Source: Podarcis pityusensis (Eukaryota). From it: 64,000 bases of DNA. Both the position numbers and the translations under genes were made by a program. The stretch lies in the NCBI GenBank assembly GCA_964106645.2, contig OZ067053.1; one strand, written 5' to 3'. The notes under the pieces are model-generated. The model had not been told where the DNA came from, made no database searches, and was given only the letters and a program-made list of their open reading frames with translations. How positions within the stretch are numbered: the stretch's first letter is position 1; every line of letters starts with the position of its first letter. Positions 564-56,181 of the stretch are shown in pieces.

Positions 564-865
564 GTGTCACTTCCCAGTCAGCCTGGACTCAGCCTGCTTC
601 AGAGTCTGTGACCCTGGGGCAAACGGTTAAACTCTCCTGTATCACTAATGATGGCAGCCATTACATTCCCTGGTATCAACAGAGATCTGGAGAAGCCCCT
701 CGTTTTGTGCACTGTGAGAGTTGCAGCAGCAGGGGAGAAGGGATCCCAGATCGGTTCACTGCTTCCCGCTCAGGTAGCATTGGCTATTTAACCATCACCA
801 ATGCAGAGGCTGAAGACGAGGCCGGTTATTACTGTGGCAGGTGGAATACAGCTGGTAATGTGTTC
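564..865 (+). CDS. IGLV: Ig lambda V exon V1 (leader upstream of window); CxxC family
   Basis: AG acceptor 562-563. QSAWTQPAS..LSC..WYQQ..HCESC..YYCGRW. 23-RSS 866-904: CACGGTG-23-ACAAAAACC. Confidence 0.9.
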
Positions 866-1294
866 CACGGTGGTACATTCTTATGGGAAACTGAGACAAA
901 AACCTTGCCTCTTCTGCCCCAGAGCCATGACATGCGAATGTTGAAGAAGAACTTCATATGCTTTGATCCTGCGGCTGTTGTCAAGTCAGACATCCGTTGG
1001 AGAGAAAGAAACCCATTTGTGCTTTCAACTCCTTCATAGCAGCAGAGCCATGTACTTGTCAAACCCACCGCACAACCAAGTCTCCATCCAGAGGAGCCAG
1101 GCCTCTGAAGACACTTATTTGTGGATCAAGGAGGCTTGGGACTTTATATCACAGCCAGATGTGAGTCCGCTTTAGGAAATGTCTGTTGCACTTCCATTTA
1201 GAGTCTGTTCATTAGCTACTGGGGTAACCATCGTGTAGATAATGCAGACACATATTCTTTCTTAGGAACCCTATAGAACTTTGTTGCAAGTGTA

Positions 1295-1663
1295 AAAGGT
1301 AAAGAAAAAAGGTAAAGGATCCTTGGACAGTTAAGTCCAGTCAAAGGCGACTATGGGGTTGCAACACTTATCTCGCTTTCAGGCTGAAGGAGCTGGCGTT
1401 TGTTCACAGCATGACTAAACTGCTTCTGGCACAATGGGATACCGTGATGGAAATCAGAGTGCACGGAAATGCCATTTACCTTCCCATCACAGCGGTACCT
1501 ATTTATCTACTTGCACTTTGACGTGCTTTTGAACTGCTAGGTTGGCAGGAGCTGGGACAGAGCAACGGGAGCTCACCCTGTCACGGGGATTCGAACCACC
1601 GACCTTCTGATCGGCAAGCCCAAGAGGCTCAGTGGTTTAACTCACAGCGCCACCCGTGTCCCC
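1295..1663 (-). mobile_element. Sauria SINE
   Basis: Reverse complement of the GGGACACGGGTGGCGCTGTG head and (ACCTTT)n tail. TGCAAGTGTAAA occurs on both sides. Confidence 0.85.
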
Positions 1664-2415
1664 TTTATCTGCAAGTGTAAATAATCACACACACACAGTT
1701 TATTATCAATTTGTGAATAAATCATATTTCTTAAAGCCACGACAGTCTCTGCCACGTCTTTAATTCTCCAGAGGAGCACAAACCCTGGAAACCCCCTGGA
1801 ATCCTGCTACCACTAGGCTGTGTGTGTGTGTGTGGGTGGGTGGGAGGGGTGGTGCCCAACCTTTGTAGCAGGAGCAATGCCATGACTGCGACAAAACTCT
1901 TTCTTGCCGGAGTGAGGAAATGTGAATGTTTTTCTAAAAATGTAAATACGATCTATTCCTGCGGTTGTTGCCAAGTCAAATTTACTATGGACAGAACTTG
2001 TAAGTCATCTGATGTCTTAAAAGTCTTCTGTTTCTTCCTGTCACCTGTGTCTGCAGCTGGTGTCATGTCAACCCTGCAATGCACCGAACTGGAAGAGACA
2101 GGAAACCCTTTGCAGAAGGAGGTGGGACTTCAAAGATGACCATGCACCTTCCAAGCCAAGGAACGGCCTGTCCCTTTTTGCCACCTGAGGTGAAATTGGG
2201 ATTTGCTACTCCCTGCCCCACTGCTATACCCCTGCCCACCCCACTTCTGCCACTGCTGAAAAGCCGCCTATCACTGCACTTGGTGAGAAACAGGGAATTA
2301 TGTCATGCAATGCTGCTCACCGGAACGCCTCCCTCTTGATGACAAGAGGGTTCTGGCGTTCTGGCGGCAGTGGAGTAGGCAGAGAGGTTGTGCCAATTCC
2401 CAAGCGTTCACAATA

Positions 2416-2667
2416 CAGCAGTACCTTGGTTTTCAAACGTAATCCTTCCCGGAAAACCGTTTGAGTTCCGAAACGTTCGAAAACCGAGGTGCAAAGGGCG
2501 GTCTGCAAATTTAATAGAGACAATTGAGAAAAATAACATATACACTCAGCGGAAGCTCTCCGACTTCTGAGGCGCGTTCAAAAACGGAAGCATTTACTTC
2601 CAGGTTTACGGCGTTCGAGTTCTGAAGTGTTCGTCAACAGAGACGCTCGAAAACTGAGGTACCACTG
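2416..2667. mobile_element. Tc1/mariner-type MITE
   Basis: TIR CAGCAGTACCT...AGGTACCACTG flanked by TA. Confidence 0.75.
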
Positions 2668-3355
2668 TATTCACATGTGAGATGATCCACACTAAAAAAT
2701 TAGTGCTCCTTGGATCCCTGTTTTTCTTTAGACTGACTTTTATGCAAATTTGTCCTATGGTCATTGGTTATGTCCAAATATCCCATAATGCTTTACAGCA
2801 GGCGCATCCAACTCCCAAGAGACTGTGATCTACTCTCAGTATAAAAAACAGGCATTGATCTACCCATTGTTATTGCCTAGAGTTATTGAGCTTTTTGGGG
2901 GGGAGGATTGACCAGACCCTTTTTTCGAACTGGCTTTTTATGATCTTTATTTTTTTATAGTTCTCTATGCAGGTTTTAATATTTGAATATTTAGATCTGT
3001 GCTAAAGGAGAATGTGTACAGATAACTGAGGGTTGGAAAAGGAAGGGATCTATCTGAGAGATGGATCAGAGTGGGTTTTGTCAAGGTTTGAGGCGGAGGC
3101 ATGAGGGAGACCTCCCAGGTGGGAGATGGGGTGACTCAGCTCTCGATATGCGGATGGAAGATTGAGATGAAAGGTTGATAGAGGGCTATACATAGATATA
3201 ATTGCGTTTTATGAGAATCATGAATATTGCTACAAAGTTCGTCAGCCAAGTAAAGTGTTCAAAAATTGATAAGATGGTGTGGTGTCCAGAAAAATGCACA
3301 CATTACTGAAAATGATATACGAAAATGCATAGTTCTAGGGAGAAACATGTGTATA

Positions 3356-13353: not shown

Positions 13354-13502
13354 NNNNNNNNNNNNNNNNNNNNNNNNNNNNNNNNNNNNNNNNNNNNNNN
13401 NNNNNNNNNNNNNNNNNNNNNNNNNNNNNNNNNNNNNNNNNNNNNNNNNNNNNNNNNNNNNNNNNNNNNNNNNNNNNNNNNNNNNNNNNNNNNNNNNNNN
13501 NN
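13354..13502. other. Assembly gap (N run)
   Basis: Run of Ns where paralogous units carry a (TAT)n tract. Confidence 1.
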
Positions 13503-14807
13503 TAACACAATTGCCAATAGGCCTCATTCCAAAAGGAATGATGAACCCTGGGAAACGCCTGGAACCCATGGAACCCCCCACCACTTGGAGTTTGGGGTGA
13601 CGTGGAAATATAGGCTTTCTGCCTGCAGTTGCTGTCAAGTCCAACGTCTTCTGCCTAGAATTTGTAACAGATAAAAAGCACATTTGAAGACCCCCCCCTC
13701 TTGCTGCAGAGCAGGACCTCTATCATGTCTGCGCTCAGAGTCAGCACCACCACCTGGGCTGGATGGAGGTAGGAAGCCAAGCAGATGGGGGCACTTAATC
13801 CCATCCGCACTCTTGTTCCAGGCTGCTGGAGAGTCTGGTGGGAGTCCGCCAATTCTGCTCTCCCACGAAGGTCTCAGGGATAGCATTCTTGTCACTGTTG
13901 CCGGCTGCGTGCCTTTTCATCCCAATCTCCGCTCCTCATATGCCAGAAGGTGGCACCAGAGACTTTTGAAATAACAAGAATGAATGTTTTCTTCACCAAG
14001 TTCATGCAATAATTTAAAGTTCTATAGTGTTGTACAGCGGGGGTAGGGAAACTCTGGCCTTTCAGAAGTTGCTGGACTCCAACTCCCATCAGCCCCTGCC
14101 AGCAAGAACAATAGAAGGATGCAAAGAGCAGGCGGACCAATCGGCCTCTTTCTGTGCAGGAGGACATAGACTAGGCTGCCCAGAGTGCGCAGCTTGGTTT
14201 GTGCAGCCCTGAGGAGTGGGTGTTCTTCCCCTCTTTTGAACTTCTCAATCCTTTGTTTCACTGATTCATTTCATAATATTTCTACACCACTTGATCGTAT
14301 TAAAAAAGCCTCAAAGGTTATAAAGAGATAAGACAATGAAGAAAAAATCACAATGTTACTATAAAAAATAAAAAATAAAAATACAATAGTCAGACTGAAC
14401 TTTCTAAGACTTTCTAAGAATCATGAGCTTTTTTCATTCCTACGCAGTCCTCTGTCCCTCCTGCCCATTTTAGGAATGGTCCCAAGTGAGATAGATGTCC
14501 CACTCCATAAAAAGCAGTGTTCCCAGGACCCTTCCTGATAGACGTCTTACAGCAAAGAGTTCCTTCATGGCTGTCTCATCACATCCAGTCCTGCTGCTTT
14601 GAGAAATCTCCTTTATGCAAATCTGCCCTTGGGCCCTTTGATGGAATGTCCCATAATGCTCTACAGGATCTCCAAATCCCAATAGAGGCAATCGATGATC
14701 AAAGAAGATATTTGCATGAAGGGGCAGCTCTTCAGCTCTGGGGTATTTAAGAGAGGAGTGAGGAAATTTCCTTCAGTAGTTCAAACTCCTCTGGAGAGCT
14801 CACCATC

Positions 14808-15272
14808 ATGTCTTCCTTTCTCTTTCTCCTTGCTCTTTTTATTTACTGCTCAGGTAACGCTTTGGAGAAGATCTCATTTTCCATTGGCCAACCAAAAGCT
14901 AACTGCATTTATCATTTTATTTATTTGAGAGCACTTTGAAATATTCATTTTTTTTCTGATTTGTTATTAAACAGGTGTCACCTGCCAGTCAATTTGCACT
15001 CAGCCTGCCTCCGAATCTGTGGCACCAGGTCAAACCATTAAACTCTCCTGTACAACTAGTGATACTATTTCCTACGTTCGCTGGTATCAACAGAGATCAG
15101 GGCAGGCCCCTCGATTTGTGCAGTATGAGGGTAGCAGCAGGGGAGAAGGGATCCCGGATCGGTTCACTGCTTCTCGCTCAGGGAACAATGGCTACGGTAT
15201 TTAACCATCACCAATGTCCAGGCTGAAGACGAGGCCGTTTATCACTGTGGCAGATGGTATGGTAACACGTTC
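14808..15272 (+). pseudogene. IGLV: Ig lambda V6 pseudogene (5-bp insertion in FR3); leader 14808-14853, exon from 14975
   Basis: GGCTACGGTATTTAA versus GGCTATTTA in paralogs gives a frameshift and TAA at 15202-15204. RSS 15273-15311. Confidence 0.9.
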
Positions 15273-15669
15273 CACAGTGATGCAAAGTAATGGGGAAGTG
15301 TGGCAAAAACCTTTTCTTTTTCACCAAAGAGCAGTGAGATGTGAATACCAAAAACAAACATCATCTAATCTGTGTCTACATCTGTTGTCAAGTCCATCCT
15401 ACTCTGGATGGAACCAGAAGAGACAGAAAACTCTGCAGTCCCACCTCCTTCCTCCCAGCAGGACTTTGAAACTGCCAGCCCAGCAGACCCTCAAGTCAGC
15501 CCTTCCCAGTGGATGAAAGATTGCATTGGGAAAGTCAGGCTGCAGACTTCATATCATTCCAGATGGAAGTCTGTTTTAGGAATTGTGAGCTATAAGAGAA
15601 ATGCCACCTGCTGACTGCTAGGTTGGTTCTTCATTGAGCCTATTATAATGTTCTTATTATTTTCTGAGC

Positions 15670-15711
<42 letters not shown>

Positions 15712-15948
15712 TGTTCAGGTTGTATATATGCATAAATAAACTATATATCATAAAGACACCACAATCTCCAATGCGCCTTATTCCCAAAGGGAAGACGAAC
15801 CCTGGGAAATGCCTGGAACCCCTGGAACCTCCCACCACTTGGAGATTGGGGTGGTGTGCAGAAGTAGGTTTTGCACCTGCAATTGCTGTCAAGCCAAACT
15901 TCCTCTGCCTCAAACTTGTAAGAGCAAAGAACACATTTAAGAACCCCC

Positions 15949-18029
15949 GGACTTCCGGAGGTGGCGCCAACGGTAATGGCGGATTCCCTCTAACTCGGAG
16001 GGAAGCCGCTCCACAAAAATCGGGTCTGACACCGCTTCGGCGCAGCGGGGACCCTTCAAATCACAGGCGGGTGAAGCCTGTGACCCTGGGACTCGGCGGG
16101 CACTGTTTGCGCCCCCCCAATCTGCAAAGGAACCCGGCAAAGGGCTCCGGAACAGAGCGGGGAAGTGGCGCTGTGCTGTGAGTCGTCTGCTTCTTTTGTG
16201 GAGTGAAGCCGCGTAGCTGTTGCCGGAGAGCGCTGCCTTTTTTCCTGGACAATTCAGACTTTAAAATAAACACCCATGAGTACTTAGAATTTGAACAAAT
16301 GGGACAGTAAATGAAGATTTGCGAAAAGGACAGAATTGGATTATAAAAAAAAAAGAAAAAAAACCTATTGAATTTGGTACGGAGCGGGAAGGGCTAAACA
16401 GGAAGTCATCCTTCCGTTCTTTTGTAAATAGAACAAAGCAAAGGCAATTTACACTAGAGCTTAGAAAATCGCTTTTAAAAGAGTGGACTCCAACATTTTA
16501 AACTAGGAATATTTTTTTGGACTATTTGAAGGAGTAAAAGGAAGTTATTTTCGTCCTGATCCTGGAGCGGGGAAGTCAGGACTGACGTGAATCTATCAAG
16601 ATAATTGTGTGTGACAGATAGTTAAAAGAAGAAAATTCTTGCGACTTTACTGTTCCCTTTCGCATTTTAAAGGAATATATATGGATAAAGTATTTCAAGT
16701 ATTTTGGAAATGTAGCAAAAACAAATATAAGTCTTCCCCCTAGGGGGAGCCTTTGAAACTGTAACTAATCCTAAGGACTTGACAGTTGCTACAAAAATAC
16801 CGTGGGAAAGCGTAACAATGTTTTCAGAAGTCTGGGTGAGCCTGCTCTACAAAACAAATACTCTACTGGAAGAATTATATGATAAGGTGAACCGGATGGC
16901 TAATTCGACTAGAAATCTTAGACAGGCAGTGGAATGTTTTGACCAGACTGTGGGAATATATGTGGAGTCTATCCAGGACTTAAACCAGGAGTGTGTTTTG
17001 ACAGAACAGGGGTTTGTGGTATCAAATCAGGAGAGTGTTTTGACAGAACAGACCCAACAGGAGTTTGATCCTTCGGATTGGAAAAAGGAACTTGGAAAAA
17101 ACCAGATTTGGGAAGGGAAAGTTCGGTGTGGTCTGGAAATGGGGGGCTGGATCGACCCCCCTATGTCGGGATATCTGGACTTCTTAAATATGGTAACAGG
17201 CTGCGATATGTTTGGGATTGTGGGGGCCCACAATTATGGAGGGCCCATGAAGTATGCTTTTAAACACTATATGGAATGCAGCGATGAATACGGAAAAGGG
17301 TCTGATCTGATGAGAAGGGCTAAAAACACTATTAAGTTGGAGTTACCACGAGCAAGAGACTACAGCCACAAATATGAAGAAGAGCAGCGGAAGGGCCATG
17401 GAAGTGACCTGAGGGCCTCGGACATAAGGTCACCGGGTTAGATTGGGGAATAAGGACTGACAAATCCCGGAACCAGGAGGAAGGGACGTTGGATAAAGAT
17501 TGGACTTGCTTATGTGCTTCTTTTTCTCTTTTTTAACTAATAGAATGTTTTATAAAGTTGATGAATGATAGAAAAATGTTGGAAGAAATTAGCTGGCTTT
17601 AGTAAAGATGTATAAAGAATTATGAAAGAACATTATGAACACAAGAAGTTGGTAAAGTTAAGACTTAAATTTTAAACTTTAAGGTTTATTTTAATATAGA
17701 AAGATAGGATCAAATTAGTTTAGAATTCTTTCTATGCCTTATTTTTTTTGAAATATGGAAAGGAAAGGATTTGCTGGGATAATTAATAACTAGAATACAA
17801 AGGAAGGGAGGAGGAGGAGGTCTAAGAAAGAAGGTAATGACAATTAAGGACTTGAAAATAATGAACTTGTTTTGTTTTTTTTCTTTATTTTTCTTTTCTA
17901 TTTTCTATTTTCTCATATTTGTACCTTTATTTTTTGTATTTTTATTTTTTACTTTTTGTTTCTGTTTTGTTTTTGTGTAAGTTTTGTATTTTTCAAATTT
18001 CAATAAATATCATTAAAAAAAAAAAAAAA
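15949..18029 (+). mobile_element. Non-autonomous L1-tailed retroelement (~2.1 kb)
   Basis: CpG-rich 5' end GGACTTCCGG; AATAAA and poly(A) at the 3' end; imperfect TSD AAGAACCCCC/GAAGACCCCC. Absent in paralogous units (e.g. 41760). 3' UTR resembles the L1 at 47570-47820. No RT. Confidence 0.8.
16818..17441 (+). CDS. 207-aa ORF of the non-autonomous element, unknown function (possible coiled coil)
   Basis: ATG-started part of ORF 16779-17441. Heptad-like LLEELYDKVNRMANSTRNLRQAV and an internal duplication NQE(C/S)VLTEQ. Confidence 0.4.
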   Translation: MFSEVWVSLLYKTNTLLEELYDKVNRMANSTRNLRQAVECFDQTVGIYVESIQDLNQECVLTEQGFVVSNQESVLTEQTQQEFDPSDWKKELGKNQIWEGKVRCGLEMGGWIDPPMSGYLDFLNMVTGCDMFGIVGAHNYGGPMKYAFKHYMECSDEYGKGSDLMRRAKNTIKLELPRARDYSHKYEEEQRKGHGSDLRASDIRSPG

Positions 18030-19211
18030 GAAGACCCCCCTCCTGCTGCAGAGCAGGACCAGGGACCTCCCAACCCAGCCCTCAATCCCATCCACACCAG
18101 GAGTGCCAGGCTTCCGCAGATTCCTAGGGCTTGTCTAATTTCTGGAAAGCACAGCTATAAGGACTTTTACGCTTTGCCCCTGATTTCTAGACAGGAGTCT
18201 GTCTGGTTTTGCCTTGGCCCCGCTGCTTTCCCCGGAAAACCTGCTCTTCAACCCTGAATTGGAACAACTGGCAATCTGTGAAAAATCAAACTGCCCTTTG
18301 CTGCCATTCAGAAGTAAACTGCAGCTTTTTCCTGGGTAAAGAGGCAGGGGAAATGGAGCTGTGCCCCTCCTTTTGGATCAAAGTGGTCGGTTTGGAAAGG
18401 CTTGGGAGTTTATATCTATTTAGATCCATTTGAGGAAAAGTGAAATATTAGAGAGACATGCGCCAATGGGGGCGCAGCGAACCCAATAATTGTCAAGGAA
18501 GGGGCCAGGCCCCTCAAAACTGCCCAGCGGATGTGCTCACCTGCCACAGGAAATGCTTGTGTCAGTGGTGCAAGCTGTAGGGCATGCGCACGGCATGCCA
18601 GACCACCCTGTGACATTCGTGCCTGATGTCAGAATGGAGGTCTGTTCTGCAAAGCAGTAACGTGAACCTGAATACGGCAGCTGTGGGGAAATGGTGGCCT
18701 TTCAGAAATGGGTGGACTCCCATCAGCCCCAGTCAGCATGGCCAATGGCCAGACACATTTGGGCCTTTCTCTAAGTGTTCCTAAAATTTGACAATGCCTC
18801 TTGCTCGTCTGGAGGGAGGATGGAAAGAGACGTGTGAAGACACTTTCGCAGGAGACAGAATTAAAATTCAGAGCCATTGCTCCACCCACTTTTTGCTCTG
18901 GTCCCTCCTCCCATTGGCAGGTGCCTTGGCCAGTCCATGGCTTTAACAAGCCTCTTTCCCCCCAGAACTGGAGTCTGAAACTAGCATTTCTTCCTACCAA
19001 TAGCTTAGAAACTTATGTAAGTAAGCAACATTTGGCTTCTTTCCTGACTGGTGATTTACTGCTGGCTCGCTCCTGTCACTGACCCACTACTTTTTAATTT
19101 TATTTTAAAAATGCTTTATGAAAATCTGTTCTATTCTCCTCTGTTTGACTGCCCCACAATGCTTTGCAGGAACATGAAGCTCTAGGAGAGGTGATTGGAT
19201 ATCCCCAGAAC

Positions 19212-20523: not shown

Positions 20524-23208
20524 TCAGGCTCAGGTTATATATATGTGTAAATAAACCATATATCATAAAGACTCCACAATCTCCAATGGGCCTCTTTCCG
20601 AAAGGAAGGACGAACTCTGGGAAATACCTGGAACCTCCCACCACTTGGAGATTGGAGTGACGTGGAAAAAGAGGCTTTGAGCCTGCAATTGCTGTCAAGT
20701 CAAACTTGTTATTCCTAGAACTTGTAAGAGAGAAAGAACACATTTGAAGTCCCCCCTCCTCCGGGACCAGGGACCTTCCAACCCAGCCCTCAATACCGTC
20801 CGCACCTGGAGTGCCAGGCTTCCGCAGATTCCTAGGGCTTCTCCACATTTCTGCTTGTCCCATTCCTAGAAAGCACAGCTACGAGGACTTTTATTGCTTT
20901 GCCCCTGCTTTCTAGGCATGAGTCTGGCTGGTTTTGCCTTTGCCCTGCTGCTTTCCCCTGGAAAACCTGCTCTTCAATCCTAAATCGGAACAACCAGCAA
21001 TCTGTGGGGAATCCGATTGCCAGACCTTTCAAGTGTCTCTATTTTCCAGGGTCAGTCTTGAATCTACATAAACCATCCTGGTTTCTGATTTGAGTCTCAC
21101 TTTTCCTTAGATCGTCCCAATTTCCATCTGAGAAATGTTGGAGGGTATGGAGTCACTGAACCCACAAGCCATTTAAGACAGCCCTATATAGCCAAGTCTT
21201 TAATGTTTTATTATGCTTTATATATGTTGGATGCCACCCAGAGTGGCACCCCAGTCAGATGGGCAGGGTATAAAGAGTTAAATTATTATTATGGGATAGG
21301 AGGTCCCTATTTTCATTGGAGAAATGTTGGAGGGTACATTGACAGGCATCTGCCCAAGAGTCATATTCCCCACCTGGTAACTTTCCATGGGTCCCGTGTC
21401 ACGGGTGGGTGGGGCCAGAGGCAAAGGTGCCATGAACAGATATTTTACCTCTCTACTGTAGGCTAGTCCCCCCAACACTCACTATCCTCCATCCACGAAA
21501 CGAGAGGCATCAGCGGAATACGAGGGCACATCCCTGCCAGGCAGAAACCCTTGGGGTGGAAACAGAGCCAGTGGAAGGTGTGGCTAGAGGAGAGTGGGCG
21601 TGGCCTAGAGCAGTGGCAACGTGTGTGTGGGGAATGGGGTGCTTGCCCCAGACAGAAAATTGTTAGGGGCACAAAAATTTGTACACTTGGTGTTGCCTCA
21701 ATACAACTGCGCACTTCCGTAATGTGCTCCCTTGAAAAAAGGTTTTCCATGTGAAGTTGACCTCTCCAACTAATGGGGTGACTCTTATTTTCTTGTCTCT
21801 TTGGCTGCAATCTCCTGGGTGATGTAGAGGCTGCAAGGCAGTTGAATGTGCATGCGTACTTTATCCGTTTCCCTCCCCCCCTGCACTTGGCCCCGGGCGC
21901 TGCAACCCATGCTACACCACTGGCCTGCAGGGCCAGACAGAGTCACCCACAGAGACACATTGCTCTCTGAGCTTGCGGCTTGTGTTACAGGTTGAGCAGC
22001 TGCTTCCAGAAGTGACAGATGCTGTCAGGTGTTGTCAAAGGCTTCTGGCTAATTGCCCAGGAAATTAGAGAGGAAGAGAAAGAGTGAGTTTTCCAGTGAC
22101 GTTCTGTGTGATGCAAAAATCAGGCACTCTTTCTGCTTCTCGTCTTCCATTGTTTTTCATAGTTGTGGCACCTCAGGAGCTCTAGGTCCACTCTCCCCGC
22201 AACTGGACAGAGAGTCAGGGGAGAGGGAGAGGGAGAGGGGGGGAAATCTCTATAGGCTACTCAATCTCCTGCTCCCTGACCCTCAAGTCTGCCTTGATAC
22301 TGCACTGAGTATCCAGATGGGCTCAGCCGGGTGAGACCAAATCCACTCTGCTCTCAGAGGCGATTCAACTGGTTTGGCCTAATTGGGCAAGTCGCTGCTG
22401 AAATCTGGGAGCCCAAAGTCTCCCACCCAGATCTCAGTGATACTTTTCTTGCTACTCTTGAAGGCTGCGTGTTTTTTCATCACAATCTCTGCTCCTCATA
22501 TGTCAGAAGGTGGCAGCAGAGACTGTGCCTTTTGAAATACGGAGAACGAATGTTTTCTTCACCAAGTTTATGCAATAATTTAAAGCTTAATAGTTTTGTA
22601 CAGCAGAGGTATGGAAACCATGGCCTTTCTGAAGTTGTGGGGCTCCAACTCCAGTCCCAGCCACAAGAACAACAGGTGCATGCAAAGAGCAGGTGGACCA
22701 ATCGGTCCCTTTCTGTGCAGGAGGACATAGACTAGGTTGTCCAGGTTAGAAAATGATAAGACAAAAGAAGAAAAATTCACAACCTTACTTTAAATTATAA
22801 AAAGTTAAGATACAATGAAAGAATGAACTTTCTAAGACTTTTTCAGAATTATGAGCTCTTTTCATTCCTACACAGTGCTCTATCTATAAAGCCCAGGTTA
22901 GGAATGTTCCCAAGTGAGATGTTCCACACTATACTGCAAAGAGTCCCTTCATGCCTATCTCATCACATCCTGGCTGAACAAAGGGCCATTCCTGTTGCTT
23001 TGAAAAATCTCCTTTATGCAAATCTGCCCTTGGACCCTTTGACTGAATGTCCCATAATGCTCTGTAGGATCTCCAAACTCCAATAGAGGTAATCGATGAT
23101 CACAGAAGACATTTGCATGAAGGGGCAGCTCTTCAGCTCTGGGGGATTTAAGAGAGGAGTGAGGAAGTTTCCTTCAGACATTGAAACTCCTCTGGAGAGC
23201 TCACCGTC

Positions 23209-41105: not shown

Positions 41106-43691
41106 CACAGTGATGCAAACTGATGGGGAACTGAGACAAAAACCTTTCCTCTTCCACCAAAGGGCAGTGAGATGTGAATACTGAAAACCAACTTCATGTA
41201 ATCTGTGTCTACATCTGTTGTCAAGTCCATCCTACTCTGGATGGAACCAGAAGAGACAGAAAACTCTGAAGTCTCACCTCCTTTCTCACAGCAGGACCTT
41301 GGATCTGCCAGCCCAGCACACCCTCAAGTCAGCCCTTCCTTGTGGATGAAAGAGCTGCTTTGGGAAAGTCAGTCTGCAGACTTCATATCATTGCCAGATG
41401 GAAGTCTCTTTTAGAAATGTTGAGCTATAGCAGAAATGCCACCTGCTGACTGCTAGGTCAGTCTTCATTGAGCATATTATAATGATATTATTATTATTTA
41501 CTGAACATTATTATTATTATTATTATTATTATTACAGGCTCAGGTTCTATATATGTGTAAATAAACCATATATCATAAAGACACCACAATCTCTAATGCG
41601 CCATATTCCCAAAGGAAAGACGAACCCAGGGAAACGCCTGGAACCCCTGGAACCTCCCACCACTTGGAGATTGGGGTGGTGTGCAGAAGTAGGCTTTGTA
41701 CCTGCAGTTGCTGTCAAGCCAAACTTCCTCTGCCTCAAACTTGTAAGAGAAAAGAACACATCTGAAGTCCCTCCTCCTCCTGCAGAGCAGGACCCTGGAC
41801 CTCCCAACCCAGCCCTCATTCCTATCCACACCCGGAGTGCCAGGCTTCCGCAGATTCCTAGGTCTTGTCCACATCTCTGCTTGTCCAATTTCTGGAAAGC
41901 ACAGCTATAAGGACTTTTACGCTTTGCTCCTGCTTTCTAGACAGGAGTCTGGCTGGTTTTGCCTTTGCCCTGCTGCTTTCCCCTGGAAAACCTGCTCTTC
42001 AACCCTAAATCGGAAAAACCAGCAATCTGCAAAAAATCTGATTGCTGTTAGGTGCCATTCAGAAGTAAATCTGATTGCCAGACCTTCCAAGTGTCCCTAT
42101 TTTCCAGGGTCAGTCCAGAATCTACAAAAGCCGTCCTGGTTTCTGATTTGATCCCAGAAAGTCCCACTTTTCCTTAGATCGTCCCAATTTCAATCTGAGA
42201 AATGTTGGCGGGTATGGAGTTATTGAACCCAGAAGCCATTTGAAGACAGCCCTGTAGAGCCATGTTTTTAATGTTTAATGTTTTATTATGCTTTTATATG
42301 TCTTGGATGCCACCCAGAGTGGCACCCCAGTCAGATGGGCAGGGTATAAAGAGTTAAATTATAGGATAGGAGTTCCCGATTTTCATTGGAGAAATGTTGG
42401 TATGTACGTTGACAGGCATCTGCCCGAGAGTCATATTTCCCCACCTGGTAACTTTCCATGGGTCCCATGTCACAGGTGGGTGGGGCAGAGGCAAAGGTGC
42501 CATGAACGGATATTTTACCTCTCTGTTGTAGTCTAGTCCCCCCAACACTCACTATCCCCCATCCATGAAATGAGAGGCATCAGCGGAATGCTAGGGCACA
42601 TCCTTGCCAGGCAGAAACCCTTGGGGTGCAAACAGAGCCAGTGGAAGGTGTGGCTAGAGGAGAGTGGGTGTGGCCTAGAGCAGTGGCAGAGTGTGTGTGG
42701 GGGGGAATGGGGTGCTTGCCCCAGACACAAAATTGTAAGGGGCACAAAAAATTGTACACTTGGTGCTACCTCAATACAACTGCACACTTCCGTAATGTGC
42801 TCCCTTGAAAAAAGGTTCTCCATGTGAAGTTGACCTCTCCAAACAATGGAGCGACTCTTATTTTCTTGTCTCTTTGACTGCAATGTCCTGGGTGATGCAG
42901 AGGCTGCTAGGCATTTGAATGTACATGCGTACTTTATCCGTTTCCCTCCCAGCCCCCCTGCATTTGGCCCCGGGCGCTGCAACCCACGCTACACCACTGG
43001 CCTAGAGGGCCAGACAGAGACACATTGCTCTTTCAGCTTGAGGTTCCTCACCTTGTTGCAGATTGATGAGCTGCTTCCACAAGTGACTAATGCTGACAGG
43101 TGCTGTCGATGGCTTCTGGCTAATTGCCCAGGAAATCAGAGAGGCAGAGAAAAAGCCAGCTTTCCAGTGACGTCCTTTGTGATGTAAAGATTAGACACTC
43201 TCCCTGCTTCTCGTCTTCCATTGTTTTTCATAGTTGTGGCACCTCAGGAGCTCTAGGTCCACTCTCCCCTCAACTGGGCAGAGAGTCAGGGGAGAGGGAG
43301 AGGGGAGGGGGAAAAATCTCTATAGGCTACTCGATCTTCTGCACCCTGACCCTCAAGTCTGCCTTGATACTGTACCGAGTACCCAGATGGGATCAGCTGG
43401 GTGAGACCAAATCCACTCTGCTCTCAGAGGTGCTTCAACTGGTTTGGCCTAATTGGGCACCGTGCCATAGGAGGTGCCACACCAATGCTGTAGAACGAAG
43501 GATGAGAGGTGGGGGCATGCGCCAAATTTTAGCATCGCACAAGGCGCTGCTGGAATCTGAGAGCCCAAAGTACGCCACTTCTGTTGTCCCAATCAGGTCT
43601 CAGTGATACCGTTCTTGTCACTGTTGCAGGCTGCGTGTCTTTTCATCACAATCTCTGCTCCTCACATGTCAGAAAGTGGCAGCAGAAACCT

Positions 43692-43764
43692 CAAGGGAGG
43701 GGGGACTTGAACCACCTCTAACCAGTTTCAAGCCAGTCACACATCCTCTTATGTTTCTCCCCTT
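43692..43764 (-). tRNA. trnS: mt tRNA-Ser(UCN), NUMT copy
   Basis: Minus-strand anticodon TGA; lies between the COX1 end and trnD. Confidence 0.85.
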
Positions 43765-43766
43765 AT

Positions 43767-43836
43767 AAGGTTCTAGTAAAACAATTACATAGCTCTGTCA
43801 GTACCAAATTACAGGCCACAAAACCTGTGAACCTTA
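43767..43836 (+). tRNA. trnD: mt tRNA-Asp, NUMT copy
   Basis: AAGGTTC..GAACCTT acceptor stem, GTC anticodon, directly before COX2. Confidence 0.85.
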
Positions 43837-44524
43837 GTGGCACACCCAGCACAATTAGGCTTCCAAAATGCAGCCTCCCCCATTATAGAAGAGCTTCTTC
43901 ATTTTCATGATCATGCACTAATAATTGTTTTTTTAATTAGTGCTCTAGTACTATATATTATTAGCTTAATACTATCAACAAAACTTACACATACCAATTC
44001 AATAGATGCCCAAGAAGTTGAAATAATTTGAACCATCCTTCCTGCAATTATTCTCATCTTAATTGCTCTTCCATCCCTCCAAATTCTTTATTTAATAGAC
44101 AAAATTAATAATCCCCATCTAACTATTAAAGCTATTGGCCACCAATGATATTGAAGCTATGAATATACTGACTACGAAAGCCTGCTATTCGACTCTTATA
44201 TAATCCCAACATGTGATCTAAGTCCTGGAAGTTTTCGCCTATTAGAAGTAGACCACCGAGTTGTAATTCCGATAGAATCCCCAATTCGAATCTTAATCTC
44301 AGCAGAAGACGTTCTACACTCATGAGCTGTCCCAGCACTTGGCATTAAAACAGACGCAGTCCCAGGTCGATTAAACCAAACCACTTTAATTACCTCCCAC
44401 CCTGGTCTATTTTACGGCCAATGCTCAGAGATTTGTGGATCAAATCACAGCTTCATACCCATTGTTGTAGAGTCAACACCATTAAAACACTTCGAAGCAT
44501 GATCTAAAACAATAGTTTCTTCAT
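43837..44524 (+). pseudogene. COX2: Cytochrome c oxidase subunit II, NUMT copy
   Basis: [39 protein letters not shown]. 688 bp ending in an incomplete T stop. Confidence 0.96.
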
Positions 44525-44589
44525 CACTAAGAAGCTAACTTACAGCACTAGCCTTTTAAGCTAGAGAGGGAAACAATTTCCCTTAGTGA
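44525..44589 (+). tRNA. trnK: mt tRNA-Lys, NUMT copy
   Basis: CACTAAG...CTTAGTG stem, TTT anticodon. Confidence 0.88.
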
Positions 44590-44590
44590 C

Positions 44591-44751
44591 ATGCCTCAAC
44601 TTAACCCCGCCCCTTGATTCATAATATTTGTATTAGTATGAACAACCCTCATTATATTTTTTACAAAAATTATTAATACTAATTCCCACCTTTCAACCCA
44701 ACAATATAAAAAACAATCCAACAACCACTACTGAACCTGACCATGACCTAA
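44591..44751 (+). pseudogene. ATP8: ATP synthase F0 subunit 8, NUMT copy
   Basis: MPQLNPAPW...WTWPW. An apparent 1-bp deletion lies in the ATP8/ATP6 overlap. Confidence 0.9.
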
Positions 44752-44890
44752 GTTTTTTTGATCAGTTTGCAATTCCCAATATGCTAGGAGTCCCCCTTAT
44801 TATCCCAGCTTTATTCTTTCCATTAATTATTTGATTTTCAACCGACTGCCTTATCCAAAACTGCTACTCAATCATTCAGTCTTCACTGCC
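44743..44890 (+). pseudogene. ATP6: ATP synthase F0 subunit 6, 5' fragment, NUMT
   Basis: ..SFFDQFAIPNMLGVPLI.. after correcting one frameshift. Truncated at the V junction. Confidence 0.85.
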
Positions 44891-45082
44891 TGGTTTCAAC
44901 AGAGATCAGGGCAGGCCCCTCGCTTTGTGCAGTATGAGGGTGGCAGCAGGGGAGAAGGGATCCCAGATCGATTTACTGCTTCTCGCTCTGGGACCATGGG
45001 CTATTTAACCATCACCAACGTCCAGGCTGGAGATGAGGCCGTTTATTACTGTTGCAGATATTATAGCAGTGCTAGTGCGTTC
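44891..45082 (+). pseudogene. IGLV: Ig lambda V16, 5'-truncated (FR2 to CDR3 only)
   Basis: Starts abruptly at WFQQRSGQAP, joined to mtDNA. Perfect RSS 45083-45121. Confidence 0.92.
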
Positions 45083-45637
45083 CACAGTGATGCAAACTGA
45101 TGGGGAACTGAGACAAAAACCTTTCCTCTTCCACCAAAGAGCAGTGAGATGTGAATGCTTAAGAAGAACTTCCTATGCTTTGTGCTTGCAGCTGTTTTCA
45201 AGTCATGGGCAGATTTGCTTTAACTGGCCATGACTGACCATACAGACAACTTAATCCACACAGATGCTGCCACTGCAGGGAACAAACAGAGAGTGAACAG
45301 ACCCAAAGCAAGTTTTTGTTCGATCAGGCCAGACGCTCCAAGTGTCCCTATTTTGCAGTGTCAGTACTGAATCTAGAAAAGCCGTCCTGGTTTCTGAATT
45401 GATCCTGAAAGTCCCACTTTTCCTTAGATCGTTCCAATTTCCATATGAAAAATGTTGGAAGGTATGGAGTTATTGAACCCACTAGCCATTTGAAGACAGC
45501 CCTGTATAGCCAAGTTTTTAATGCTTAATGTTTTATTATGCTTTTGTATATGTTGGATGCCACCCAGAGGGGCACCCCAGTCAGATATGCAGCATATAAA
45601 GAGTTAAATTATTATTATGGGATAGGAGGTCCCGATT

Positions 45638-45671
45638 TTCATGATCAAGGTGTCTCCCCTGCCAGGTAAGT
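45638..45671 (-). ncRNA. RNU1: U1 snRNA 5'-end fragment (retrocopy, antisense to the adjoining L1)
   Basis: Reverse complement ACTTACCTGGCAGGGGAGACACCTTGATCATGAA matches my recalled human U1 nt 3-36 at 31/34. Confidence 0.88.
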
Positions 45672-47823
45672 GGTTACGGAAGAATTTAAGATAGAAAAAG
45701 GGACACGACAGGGGTGCCCAATTTCCGCATTGCTTTTTATATCGGTCCTGGAGGTTCTGCTAAACATGATTAGAAAGGACCGGTTGGTTAAAGGTATACA
45801 GGTCGGAGCTAAACAGTACAAACTGAGAGCATTTGCAGATGACTTAGTATTGACGTTACAGGAGCCAGAATCTAGCACTAAAAGAGTTTTAGAATTAATT
45901 CAAGAATTTGGTCAGGTGGCAGGCTTTAAATTGAACAAGCTAAAAACTAAGGTTTTAGAGAAAAATTTAACACCGATTGAAAGAGAGAGGTTTCAGAATG
46001 AGACAGGATTGACTGTGGTAAAGAAAGTGAAATACCTGGGGATTAATATGACAGCCAAAAATGGGAACTTATTTAAAGATAACTATGAAAAATGTTGGAC
46101 TGAAGTGAAAAAAGATTTAGAAATCTGGTCAAATTTGAAACTCTCGCTGCTGGGCCGTATTGCTGTGATAAAGATGAATGTATTGCCTAGAATGTTGTTT
46201 TTGTTTCAGACATTACAAATTGTAGATAAGATGGACTGTTTCAAGAAGTGGCAGAGAGATATTTCTAGATTTGTCTGGCAGGGCAAGAAGCCCAGAATAA
46301 AATTTAAGATATTAACTGATGCCAAGGAAAGAGGTGGATTTGCCCTGCCAGACCTTAAACTTTATTATGAATCAGCAGCTTTTTGCTGGCTGAAAGAATG
46401 GCTACTTCTTGAAAACACAGACATTTTGGATTTAGAAGGTTTTAACAATGTATTTGGATGGCATGCATACTTATGGTATGATAAGGTCAAAGCACACAAA
46501 GCATTTAAAAACCATATTGTCAGGAAAGCATTGTTTAATGTTTGGATAAGATATAAAGATTTATTGGAAAATAAAACCCCAAGGTGGCTGTCACCAATGG
46601 AAGCAAAAGCTCTGAAAAGGCTCAATATGGAGGCCAAATGGCCGACATATTGGGAAATTTTGGAACAAGAAGGAGATAAATTGAGATTGCAGAGTTTCGA
46701 AAAACTAAAAAACAAGGTGAGAGATTGGCTTCATTATTATCAGATAATGGAGGCATATAATTTGGATAAGAAAATAGGCTTCCAGGTGGAAAAGTCAAAA
46801 TTAGAGACAGAACTGCTAGAACCCAAAACTAAGAATCTGTCAAGAATGTATAACTTGCTGTTGAAATGGAATACTCAGGATGAAACGGTGAAATCTGCTA
46901 TGATTAAATGGGCACAAGATGTTGGACATAATATTATGTTTGCTGACTGGGAACAGGTATGATGTTTACGGCATGTAACGCCTTAAGAGAGAATATTATG
47001 AAAATGATATACAGGTGGTACATGACCCCAGTCAAGCTTGCAAAAATCTATCATTTGCCTGATAACAAATGTTGGAAATGTAAAGAGACTGAGGGTACAT
47101 TCTTTCACCTTTGGTGGACATGCCCAAAGATTAAGGCTTTCTGGGAATTGATATATAATGAACTGAAAAAGGTATTTAAATATACCTTTCTGAAGAAACC
47201 AGAGGCCTTTCTTCTGGGCATTGTCGGCCAATTGGTGCCAAAGAAGGATAGAACCTTTTTTATGTATGCTATAACAGCAGCAAGAATACTCATCGCAAAG
47301 TATTGGAAGACACAAGATCTACCCACTCTGGAAGAATGGCAGATGAAGGTGATTGACTACATGGAACTGGCGGAAATGACTGGCAGAATCCGAGACCAGA
47401 GAGAAGAGTCGGTGAAAGAAGACTGGAAGAAATTTAAAGACTATTTACAGAAATATTGTAAAATTAAGGAATTTTAGAAGGATGTTGGATAGAAACTAAG
47501 AGGTTTTTAGCTGTAATACTTTAAGAGATATGAAAAAAGGTTTGCAACTGGGTAATTTTAATGGTAAGGATTTGCTGAACTAACAAATTGAACTGGAATA
47601 CAAAAAAGGGAGGTATGAGGAGGTCCGGGGAAATAAGTATAGGGAAGATAGGTTATGGAAAATTAATGTCTTTTTAACTGTTTATTTGGTATGTTTCTTT
47701 TTATTTTCTTTTTTTCTTTTTTTGGTCATATTTTTTTTTAAAAAAACTTTATTCTTTTTCTTTTTGTATTCTGTATTTTTTGTATTTTTTGAAACTTTAA
47801 TAAATATTATTATTTTTTTAAAA
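45643..47823 (+). mobile_element. 5'-truncated L1 LINE (ORF2 RT, C-terminal zinc knuckle, 3' UTR)
   Basis: GTRQGCPIS, AFADDL, KYLGI, CWKC..HLWWTC. Frameshift near 46957. 19-bp TSD AGGAGGTCCCGATTTTCAT (45624-45642, 47824-47842). Empty sites near 21298 and 42368. Confidence 0.95.
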
Positions 47824-49744
47824 AGGAGGTCCCGATTTTCATTGGAGAAATGTTGGAGGGTACATTGACAAGCATCTGCCTGAGGGTCACATTCCCCACC
47901 TGGTAACTTTCCATGGGACCCACATTACTGGTGGGTGGGGCCAGAGGCAAAGGTGCAATGAATTGATATTTCACCTCTCTACGTAGGCTAGTTTTCCCCA
48001 CACTCCCTATCCCCCATTCAGGAAAGCGAGAGGCATCAACGGAATGCGAGGGAACAAACCGAGGCAGTGGAAGGTGTGGCTAGAGGAGAGTGGGTGTGGC
48101 CTAGAGCAGTGGCAAAGTGTGTGTGGGGGGGGAATGGGGTGCTTTTCCCACACACAAAGTTGTTAGGGGCACAAAATTTGTACACTTGGTGCTGCCACAA
48201 TACAGCTGCATACTTCCTTCACTGTGCTCGCTTGAAAACAGGTTCTCCATGTGAAGCTGAGCTCTCCAGACAATGGTGCGACACTCTTGTCTCTTTGGTT
48301 GCAATCTCCTGGGTGATGCAGAGGCCACTAGGCAGGTGAATGTGCATGCGTACTTTGTCCGTTTCCCTCCCACCCACCATCGCTCTTCACGCTGGCCGCT
48401 GCAACCCATGCTACACCACTGGCCTAGAGGGCCAAACTGAGTCACTCTCAGACACATTGCTCTCCGAGCTTGAGGCTCCTCACCTTGTTGCATATTGATG
48501 AGCTGCTTCCGGTGTTGTCAACAGCTTCTGGCTAATTGCCCAGGAAATCAGAGAGGAAGAGAAAGAGTGCGCTTTCTAGTGACGTCCTGTGTGATGCAAA
48601 AAATCAGGCACTCTCCCTGCCTCTCGTCTTCCATTGTGTTTCTTAGTTGTGGCACCTCAGGAGCTCTAGATCCAATGCCCGCCCCCTTCAACTGGACAGA
48701 GAGTCAGGGGAGAGAGGGAGGGAGGGAGGGAGGGAGGGAGGGAGGGAGAGAGAGAGAGGGGGGGGGAGAGAGAATGTCTGTAGGATACAAAAACTCCTGC
48801 TCCCTGACCCTCATGTCTGCCCTGATCCTACACCGAGTAACCAAGTGGACTCAGATGGGTGAGACCAACTCCCCTCTGCTTTCAGAGGTGGTTCAACTGA
48901 TTTGGCCAAATTGGAAACCGTGTGACACGGGGTGCCACACCAATGCTGTAGAATGGGGCATGAGACGTGGGAGCATGTGTCCAATTTTAGCATCGCACAA
49001 GGCGCTGCTGAATTCTGGGCGCCCAAAGACTGCCATTTCTGCCCTCCCACGAAGGTCTCAGGGATACCGTTCTTGTCACTCTTGCTGGCTGCATGCCTTT
49101 TCATCACCATCTCTGCTCCTCATATGTCAGAAGGTGGCAGCAGAGACTGTGCTACGTGAAATACTGAGAATGAATGTTTTCTTCACCAAGTTTACGCAAC
49201 AATTCAAAGCTTAATAGTTTTGTACAGTGGGGGTATGCAAACCCTGGCTGTCCTAGGTTGTCCATGTTAGAAAAAGATAAGACAAAACAAGAAAAATTCA
49301 CAACCTTACTTTAAACTATATAAAGTTAAGATACAAAGACAGACTGAACTTGGTAAGACATTCTGAGAATTATGAATTTTTTTCATTCCTACACAGTCCT
49401 CTGTCTCTCCAGCCCATGTTAGGAATGGACCCAAGTGAGATGTTCCACTCTATAAAAAACAGTGTTTCCAGGACCCTTCCTGAAAGATGTCTCACTCATG
49501 ACATCCTGGCTGAACTATGGGCCAGTCCTGCTGCTTTGAATAATCTCCTTTATGCAAATCTGCCCTTGGGCTCTTTGATTGAATGTCCCATAATGCTCTG
49601 CAGGATCTCCAAACCCCAATAGAGGCAACTGATGATCACAGAAGATATTTGCATGAATGGGCAGCTCTTCAGCTCCGGGGGATTTAAGAGAGGAGTGAGG
49701 AAGTTTCCTATAGAAGTTGAAACTCCTCTGGAGAGCTCACCATC

Positions 49745-50208
49745 ATGTCTTCATTTCTCTTTCTCTTTGCTCTTTTTATTTACTGCTCAGGTAAAGCTGT
49801 GGAGAAGATCTCATGTTCCATTGGCCAACCAAAAGCTAACTGCATTTATCATTTTTATTTATTTGAGAGCACTAAAAATGTTCCCCTTTCTCCATATTTT
49901 TTTAAACAGGGGTCACCTGCCAGTCAATTTGCACTCAGCCTGCCTCTGAGTCTGTGTCGCCGGGTCAAACCATTAAACTCTCCTGTACTACTAGTGATAC
50001 TGGCTCCTACATTGGCTGGTATCAACAGAGATCAGGGCAGGCCCCTCGCTTTGTGCACTGTGAAACTGGCAGCAGGGGAGAAGGGATCCCGGATCGATTC
50101 ACGGCTTCTCGCTCTGGGAACATTGGCTATTTAACCATCACCAACGTCCAGGCTGGAGATGAGGCCGTTTATTACTGTGGCAGATGGTATAGCAGTGCTA
50201 GTGCGTTC
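49745..50208 (+). CDS. IGLV: Ig lambda V17; leader 49745-49790, exon 49910-50208
   Basis: QSICTQP..HCETGS..YYCGRWYSSASAF. RSS 50209-50247 with nonamer ACAGAAACC. Confidence 0.92.
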
Positions 50209-56027: not shown

Positions 56028-56181
56028 NNNNNNNNNNNNNNNNNNNNNNNNNNNNNNNNNNNNNNNNNNNNNNNNNNNNNNNNNNNNNNNNNNNNNNNNN
56101 NNNNNNNNNNNNNNNNNNNNNNNNNNNNNNNNNNNNNNNNNNNNNNNNNNNNNNNNNNNNNNNNNNNNNNNNNNNNNNNNN
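56028..56181. other. Assembly gap (N run)
   Basis: Run of Ns after a (TAT)n tract. Confidence 1.

What the first reader, a model, noticed from the sequence alone, without database searches (positions are those of the whole stretch)
45624..45700. L1 insertion carrying an antisense U1 snRNA 5' end: apparent twin priming in trans
Seen: between the left TSD (ending TTTTCAT at 45642) and the truncated L1 ORF2 lies GATCAAGGTGTCTCCCCTGCCAGGTAAGT, the reverse complement of the U1 5' end. The last 5 nt of the TSD (TTCAT) extend the U1 complementarity, and both pieces sit inside one 19-bp TSD. Established: snRNA-L1 chimeras (mainly U6-L1) usually have the snRNA in the same sense as L1, and twin priming inverts part of the same RNA. 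Inference: the second target strand annealed to a separate U1 RNA, was reverse-transcribed to its 5' end, and was joined to the L1 cDNA. A side effect is a perfect splice donor CAG|GTAAGT on the V-sense strand, ~540 bp downstream of the V16 RSS.
Basis: partly seen in the sequence, partly recalled or inferred. Interest (0 to 1): 0.8.

Follow-up and report, generated by a model that had tools for sequence, protein, structure and literature searches.

The report
Inverted U1 fragment on lizard L1
A lizard L1 retrotransposon copied a short piece of the U1 splicing RNA backwards into the genome in the same event as its own insertion; this rare kind of chimera is already described in humans, and this is a clean reptile example.

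Summary
A 29-nt antisense U1 5' fragment (about nt 3-31; 45643-45671) and a 5'-truncated lacertid L1 (from 45670) sit inside one exact 19-bp TSD. At least five paralogous empty sites carry one TSD copy and no U1. L1 relatives read a different sequence upstream of 45670, so the piece is not L1. The TSD's last 5 nt match U1 loop I (4 at conserved Rfam positions); 2 nt are shared at the U1/L1 joint. Twin priming in trans fits best (~0.8). It is not new: Doucet et al. 2015 (PMC4476161) modelled it from 7 human chimeras, including a U1/L1 (truncated at nt 40, 17-bp TSD, 3-nt junction homology), and Law & Burns 2026 extend it to 5S, tRNA and U5. I found no reptile report in the library. The splice donor is just the U1 complement, and it follows a V pseudogene whose promoter and leader were replaced by a NUMT. 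Not shown: read support for the filled junction, and this species' U1 loop sequence. The scan noted cis twin priming and tailless U6 copies elsewhere in this genome (unchecked), but no U1 chimera.

The parts
45624..45642 (+). Left target-site duplication copy, 19 bp; its last 5 nt (45638-45642) are complementary to U1 loop I, about nt 32-36 (inferred top-strand primer)
   Evidence: single copy in empty paralogous sites
45643..45671 (-). Antisense, 3'-truncated U1 snRNA 5' fragment (about nt 3-31)
   Evidence: Rfam U1 E=1.2e-4; not in L1 relatives; multi-copy matches in three lacertid DNA runs
45670..45671 (+). 2-nt microhomology (GT) shared by the U1 cDNA and the L1 cDNA at the joint
45663..45671 (+). 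Consensus splice-donor-like 9-mer, the automatic complement of the U1 5' end; use not shown
   Evidence: only copy in the window
45670..47823 (+). 5'-truncated lacertid L1 (~2.15 kb): ORF2 from within the RT domain to the stop (ends 47477), T-rich 3' UTR, poly(A) signal and a short A tail; 13-nt internal deletion near 46958
   Evidence: RVT_1 E=2.4e-15; top homologues are Podarcis L1 ORF2 at 82-94%; DNA 79-90% to P. lilfordi copies
47824..47842 (+). Right target-site duplication copy
44881..45121 (+). Context: 5'-truncated Ig lambda-type V pseudogene remnant (FR2 to end) with 23-RSS, lacking promoter, leader and FR1

Best explanation
One L1 integration event used two RNA templates (twin priming in trans). 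Steps: (1) the L1 endonuclease nicked the bottom strand after a pyrimidine run (5'-CTCCT/AT), and ORF2p began reverse transcription at the L1 tail [inferred; nick context seen in sequence]. (2) The top strand was cut 19 nt away, leaving a 3' end finishing in TTCAT [TSD shown]. (3) That end annealed to single-stranded loop I of a U1 snRNA (about nt 32-36) and primed a second cDNA running to about U1 nt 3 [complementarity shown against the Rfam consensus; annealing inferred]. The stop near the capped, 2'-O-methylated first nucleotides is from my own knowledge and speculative. (4) The two cDNAs were joined at a 2-nt GT microhomology and filled in [microhomology shown; joining route inferred]. The product is a dead retrocopy with no likely function.
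For: Single exact 19-bp TSD around both parts and no separate TSD around U1. Empty paralogs at 21298, 31498, 42368, 39253, 53743 and 62492 lack both parts. In run X2 a contig 1 nt from this flank over 115 nt turns away at exactly 45642, with 14 unaligned letters, which suggests an allele without U1 or L1 (record 11; letters not shown). 4 of the 5 TSD-end nt match conserved Rfam loop positions, chance 0.5%. TSD length and purine-rich start match other Podarcis L1 copies (17, 17, 14, 12 bp). The published human U1/L1 twin chimera has a 17-bp TSD, truncation at 40, 3-nt junction homology and nick TTTCT-AT, against CTCCT-AT here.
Against: A single locus cannot show the order of events. No listed contig bridges the filled junction (inconclusive, since short unitigs were not shown and the samples are probably other individuals or species). 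This species' U1 loop base 33 was not read. The 2-nt microhomology is within chance. The twin-priming-in-trans model rests on genomic anatomy in the papers I read, not on an experiment.
Confidence: 0.8

Rival explanations
1. Two sequential insertions: the L1 came first, then a tailless U1 retrocopy primed on TTCAT and landed exactly at the TSD/L1 boundary without leaving its own TSD (or the reverse order).
For: Tailless snRNA retrocopies primed in loops are common (PMC4476161 section 8; 25 3'-truncated U6 copies in Anolis). Earlier unchecked notes report tailless U6 copies in this genome.
Against: No duplication or deletion marks a second event; the flank and TSD are intact and the L1 begins at once. 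A second hit at the one exact base of a fresh 5' junction is improbable. No intermediate state was seen in six empty paralogs or in the pieces shown.
Confidence: 0.07
2. One event, but the U1 piece came in during repair of the 5' junction (capture of a U1 cDNA or genomic U1 copy by end joining or polymerase-theta-type templated synthesis), not by ORF2p priming on U1 RNA.
For: Short microhomologies at both ends (5 and 2 nt) also fit microhomology-mediated repair (general knowledge). Lacertid genomes hold many U1-like copies (depth about 840-3240 over the U1 piece against about 12-20 for single-copy flank).
Against: The piece ends within 2 nt of the mature RNA 5' end, with no upstream genomic flank, and starts in a single-stranded loop, as RNA-primed synthesis predicts. 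The same pattern recurs for U5, 5S and tRNA in human.
Confidence: 0.11
3. Assembly artefact or chance likeness to U1.
For: The filled junction was not seen in the contig pieces displayed.
Against: 29-34 nt matching U1, an exact 19-bp TSD, and a precise start of L1 homology do not arise from misassembly or chance.
Confidence: 0.02

Closest known systems
Inverted 3'-truncated snRNA/L1 chimeras formed by twin priming (Doucet et al. 2015, Mol Biol Evol, PMC4476161; 7 human cases: 4 U5, 1 U1, 1 U2, 1 U6)
   Same: Inverted, 3'-truncated snRNA 5' piece upstream of a 5'-truncated L1 within one TSD; junction homology to the TSD end; nick fits L1 orientation. The human U1 case: L1 623 nt, TSD 17, truncation at 40, 3-nt homology, TTTCT-AT.
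   Different: Lacertid lizard L1 instead of mammalian L1; truncation at about nt 31-36, inside loop I; 5-nt homology; longer L1 (2.15 kb).
Antisense 5S rRNA/L1, tRNA-half/L1 and U5/L1 chimeras (Law & Burns 2026, Cell Genomics, PMC13174262)
   Same: RNA 5' end at the L1 junction, antisense, loop-truncated; twin priming proposed.
   Different: That catalogue is human/mammalian; other partner RNAs.
Classical twin priming in cis (L1 5' inversion; Ostertag & Kazazian 2001, cited in PMC4476161)
   Same: Same two-primer geometry and microhomologies.
   Different: The second template is a separate RNA, not the same L1 RNA.
Sense U6/L1 chimeras (template switch or RtcB ligation; PMC6789731, title and abstract only), including 3 U6-L1 in Anolis (PMC4476161)
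   Same: snRNA plus 5'-truncated L1 in one TSD.
   Different: Those are same-sense with usually full-length U6; here the snRNA is antisense and truncated.
Tailless / 3'-truncated snRNA retropseudogenes
   Same: Internal priming in a single-stranded loop by target complementarity.
   Different: They stand alone in their own TSD, with no L1 partner.

Membership tests
Inverted snRNA/L1 twin-priming chimera (Doucet 2015, Group IV twin) | snRNA and L1 enclosed by one TSD | tested here: met
   19/19 TSD; no separate U1 TSD; empty paralogs hold one copy
Inverted snRNA/L1 twin-priming chimera (Doucet 2015, Group IV twin) | snRNA in opposite orientation to L1 and 3'-truncated | tested here: met
   U1 on - strand, model positions ~3-36; L1 ORF2 on +
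Inverted snRNA/L1 twin-priming chimera (Doucet 2015, Group IV twin) | The extra segment is not part of the L1 family sequence | tested here: met
   Podarcis ORF2 proteins read KAKLIVNN before VVTEE; DNA of L001 and L003; loose ends at 45670 in four runs
Inverted snRNA/L1 twin-priming chimera (Doucet 2015, Group IV twin) | Complementarity between the TSD 3' end and the snRNA at the truncation point, in a single-stranded region | tested here: met
   4 of 5 nt at conserved loop positions of the Rfam U1 model, chance 0.005; the fifth is a variable position not checked in this species
Inverted snRNA/L1 twin-priming chimera (Doucet 2015, Group IV twin) | Cleavage site fits the L1 endonuclease when read in L1 orientation | tested here: met
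   CTCCT/AT is not the strict mammalian TTTT/AA, but is a pyrimidine run before a purine, like L001 and L002 sites of this family and the human U1 case; small comparison set
Inverted snRNA/L1 twin-priming chimera (Doucet 2015, Group IV twin) | Both parts arrive together (present or absent together across alleles or species) | tested here: inconclusive
   Only empty states seen (paralogs; probable empty allele in X2); no filled or intermediate allele was displayed
Inverted snRNA/L1 twin-priming chimera (Doucet 2015, Group IV twin) | Exact identity to the host species' own U1 gene through the primer site | tested here: inconclusive
   No host genome search available; two metagenome scans were blank; multi-copy matches at >=90% in lacertid runs, but their letters were not listed
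Sense U6/L1-type template-switch or ligation chimera | snRNA in the same sense as L1, usually full length | tested here: not met
   Antisense and 29 nt
Stand-alone tailless snRNA retropseudogene | Own TSD directly flanking the snRNA piece | tested here: not met
   The sequence after U1 is L1, not a repeat of the flank
SINEU (U1/U2-headed SINE, PMC4494074) | snRNA head in sense at the 5' end of a multi-copy element | tested here: not met
   Antisense; L1-family copies and reads lack it

The most novel reading that the evidence does not exclude
This is the first non-mammalian example of twin priming in trans, and in lizards such events recur often enough with U1 that L1 scatters perfect ready-made splice donors (antisense U1 5' ends) on its own sense strand, some of which are used in transcripts.
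Probability: 0.1. Interest if true: 0.5.

Novelty: new member of a known kind. Interest (0 to 1): 0.27.

Why it matters
It suggests that top-strand priming on a foreign snRNA is not peculiar to mammalian L1 but shared with squamate L1, so it may be an old property of the clade. With the human case (truncation at 40), it points to U1 stem-loop I as a recurrent priming site. Young, polymorphic lizard L1s could supply a larger natural sample of these rare chimeras than the 7 in Doucet's human set. It does not change the model, and no function at this locus is likely.

Tried and rejected
Exact-pattern scans of metagenome contigs for the 34-mer and the 29-mer, to get a reptile U1 gene, found nothing. 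A paper search for the U1 sequence string found nothing, and the SINEU paper has no supplements held. RNA run X23 (another lacertid sample) had no reads on the U1 piece, so it gave neither the U1 loop sequence nor donor use. The depth in bin 45628-45646 is compatible with U1 contigs reaching 45638 but is confounded by a flanking repeat, so I did not use it as evidence. Rfam scans of seven Podarcis L1 loci found no family at gathering score, and a short blast with the 34-mer found nothing longer than 14 nt; this is far too small a sample for a frequency. Rejected: the piece belongs to the L1 consensus; SINEU head; a functional donor for the adjacent V (promoterless). Folding the 34-mer alone is uninformative (z=-1.1). 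The large protein search was not needed. N runs (13354-13502, 56028-56181) were left untouched.

Full report
Setting. The window is an immunoglobulin lambda-type V cluster: repeated V-set units with octamer promoters and 23-bp-spacer RSSs. The host is a lacertid lizard: the closest relatives of the L1 ORF2 fragment are Podarcis lilfordi and P. muralis proteins at 82-94% identity. The species itself was not identified.

Observation. The 19-mer at 45624-45642 recurs exactly at 47824-47842 and cannot be extended. Joining the two flanks gives a site that aligns without a gap at the TSD to paralogous V-cluster units at 21298 and 31498 (92% identical over 141 nt), 42368, 39253, 53743 and 62492. Each has one copy of the TSD and continues into the right flank (also the alignment). 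So everything from 45643 to 47842 was added to a known empty site. The first 29 nt are the reverse complement of U1 about nt 3-31: Rfam RF00003 is the best hit, E=1.2e-4 against all families. The rest is a 5'-truncated L1 with RVT_1, a 3' UTR, a poly(A) signal and a short A tail.

The piece is not L1. Podarcis ORF2 proteins read KAKLIVNN just before the VVTEE at which the window's frame begins. DNA homology to two P. lilfordi copies starts exactly at 45670. In three lacertid DNA runs and one RNA run, L1-family contigs and 94 reads come loose at 45670 with that same upstream L1 sequence. Positions 45670-45671 (GT) belong to both U1 and L1. The U1 copy thus ends at nt 3, or as early as nt 5 if the GT came from L1; U1 nt 1-2 are absent.

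Primer site. The last 5 nt of the TSD read AUGAA on the U1 strand, at about nt 32-36, within loop I of the Rfam model. Four of them match conserved consensus letters, and the fifth is a variable position. The chance is 0.0046 for four and 0.0013 for five. I could not read this species' U1 gene. Contigs over the U1 piece sum to depth 842-3244, against about 12-20 for single-copy flank contigs, so multi-copy U1-like sequence at least 90% alike is in these genomes.

Target site. The nick in L1 orientation is 5'-CTCCT/AT. Other Podarcis L1 copies gave TSDs of 17, 17, 14 and 12 bp; the two 17-bp ones start with purine runs (AAGGAA, AGAAG), and the tails are short. So 19 bp starting AGGAGG is ordinary for this family.

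Reads. No public run holds the whole stretch (best share 0.63). No displayed contig bridges the filled junction. This is inconclusive: the 34-nt identity with U1 genes would split the junction into unitigs shorter than those listed, and 4270 pieces were not shown. In X2, a 129-nt contig with one difference over 45528-45642 leaves the window's sequence exactly at the TSD end with 14 unaligned letters (record 11). I read this as an empty allele or very close paralog, which fits a recent insertion; the letters were not shown.

Mechanism. Shown: one TSD, opposite orientations, truncation in a loop with TSD-end complementarity, and a 2-nt joint. Inferred: bottom-strand priming on the L1 tail, top-strand priming on U1 loop I, synthesis to near the RNA 5' end, and end joining. 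Confidence about 0.8. Rivals are repair-templated capture (0.11), two sequential insertions (0.07) and artefact (0.02). The geometry is symmetric, so the sequence cannot say which cDNA was made first.

Comparison with the known. Doucet et al. 2015 (PMC4476161) drew this model and listed 7 human chimeras: four U5 and one each of U1, U2 and U6, all 3'-truncated and inverted within one TSD. Their U1 row reads: L1 623 nt, TSD 17, truncation 40, junction 3 nt, nick TTTCT-AT. Law & Burns 2026 (PMC13174262) report antisense, loop-truncated 5S, tRNA and U5 partners and propose twin priming. For Anolis, Doucet et al. describe only template-switch U6 chimeras and 3'-truncated copies. Library searches found no reptile report of the inverted kind, but the library lacks most subscription papers. 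Every defining feature I could test is met; co-segregation and identity to the host's own U1 are inconclusive. It is a new member of a known kind.

The splice donor. CAG|GTAAGT is at 45663-45671, 544 bp after the nonamer. It is not independent evidence, since the U1 5' end is the complement of the donor consensus (established knowledge). The V segment upstream begins at 44881 in FR2. About 860 bp of the paralogous unit (49148-50006: octamers, leader, intron, FR1) is replaced by a 1.19-kb NUMT. There is therefore no V promoter to feed this donor, and rearrangement of this or any upstream V would delete it if joining is deletional (inference). Its use was not testable with the runs at hand.

Verdict. 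The added value is the reptile host. Interest 0.27.

Noticed in passing
window 43690-44880: A 1.19-kb NUMT (tRNA-Ser, probable tRNA-Asp, COX2, probable tRNA-Lys, ATP8, start of ATP6; COX2 nearly intact in the mitochondrial code) replaces about 860 bp of a V unit, including octamer promoter, leader and FR1, making this V a pseudogene.
   Followed up: partly
window ~46954-46960: The L1 ORF2 has a 13-nt internal deletion between two ACAG repeats, which shifts the frame; the frames on both sides are otherwise open (430 and 172 codons), consistent with a young copy.
   Followed up: partly
window ~13685-18040: A second, more distant L1-like insertion with a poly(A) tail and a candidate TSD of at least 11 bp; its 5' junction was not examined closely.
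   Followed up: partly
window ~18000-38600: Near-identical tandem segmental duplications of V units (about 10.2-kb period, e.g. 21234 and 31434; smaller 1.76-kb repeats at 23-27 kb); could be real copy-number expansion or an assembly feature.
   Followed up: no
window 45450-45627: The left flank of the insertion is itself part of a high-copy lacertid repeat (contig depth up to 2e5 near 45514-45551); family not identified.
   Followed up: no
run X23 on window 45670-45950: Reads from other copies of this L1 family are strongly one-sided (first mate on + about 10:1), which in most stranded libraries means antisense transcription of one or a few copies.
   Followed up: no
L003 5238-11140: P. lilfordi locus with two tandem L1 pieces and a 39-nt direct repeat around them, too long for a usual TSD; perhaps a nested or rearranged insertion.
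   Followed up: no
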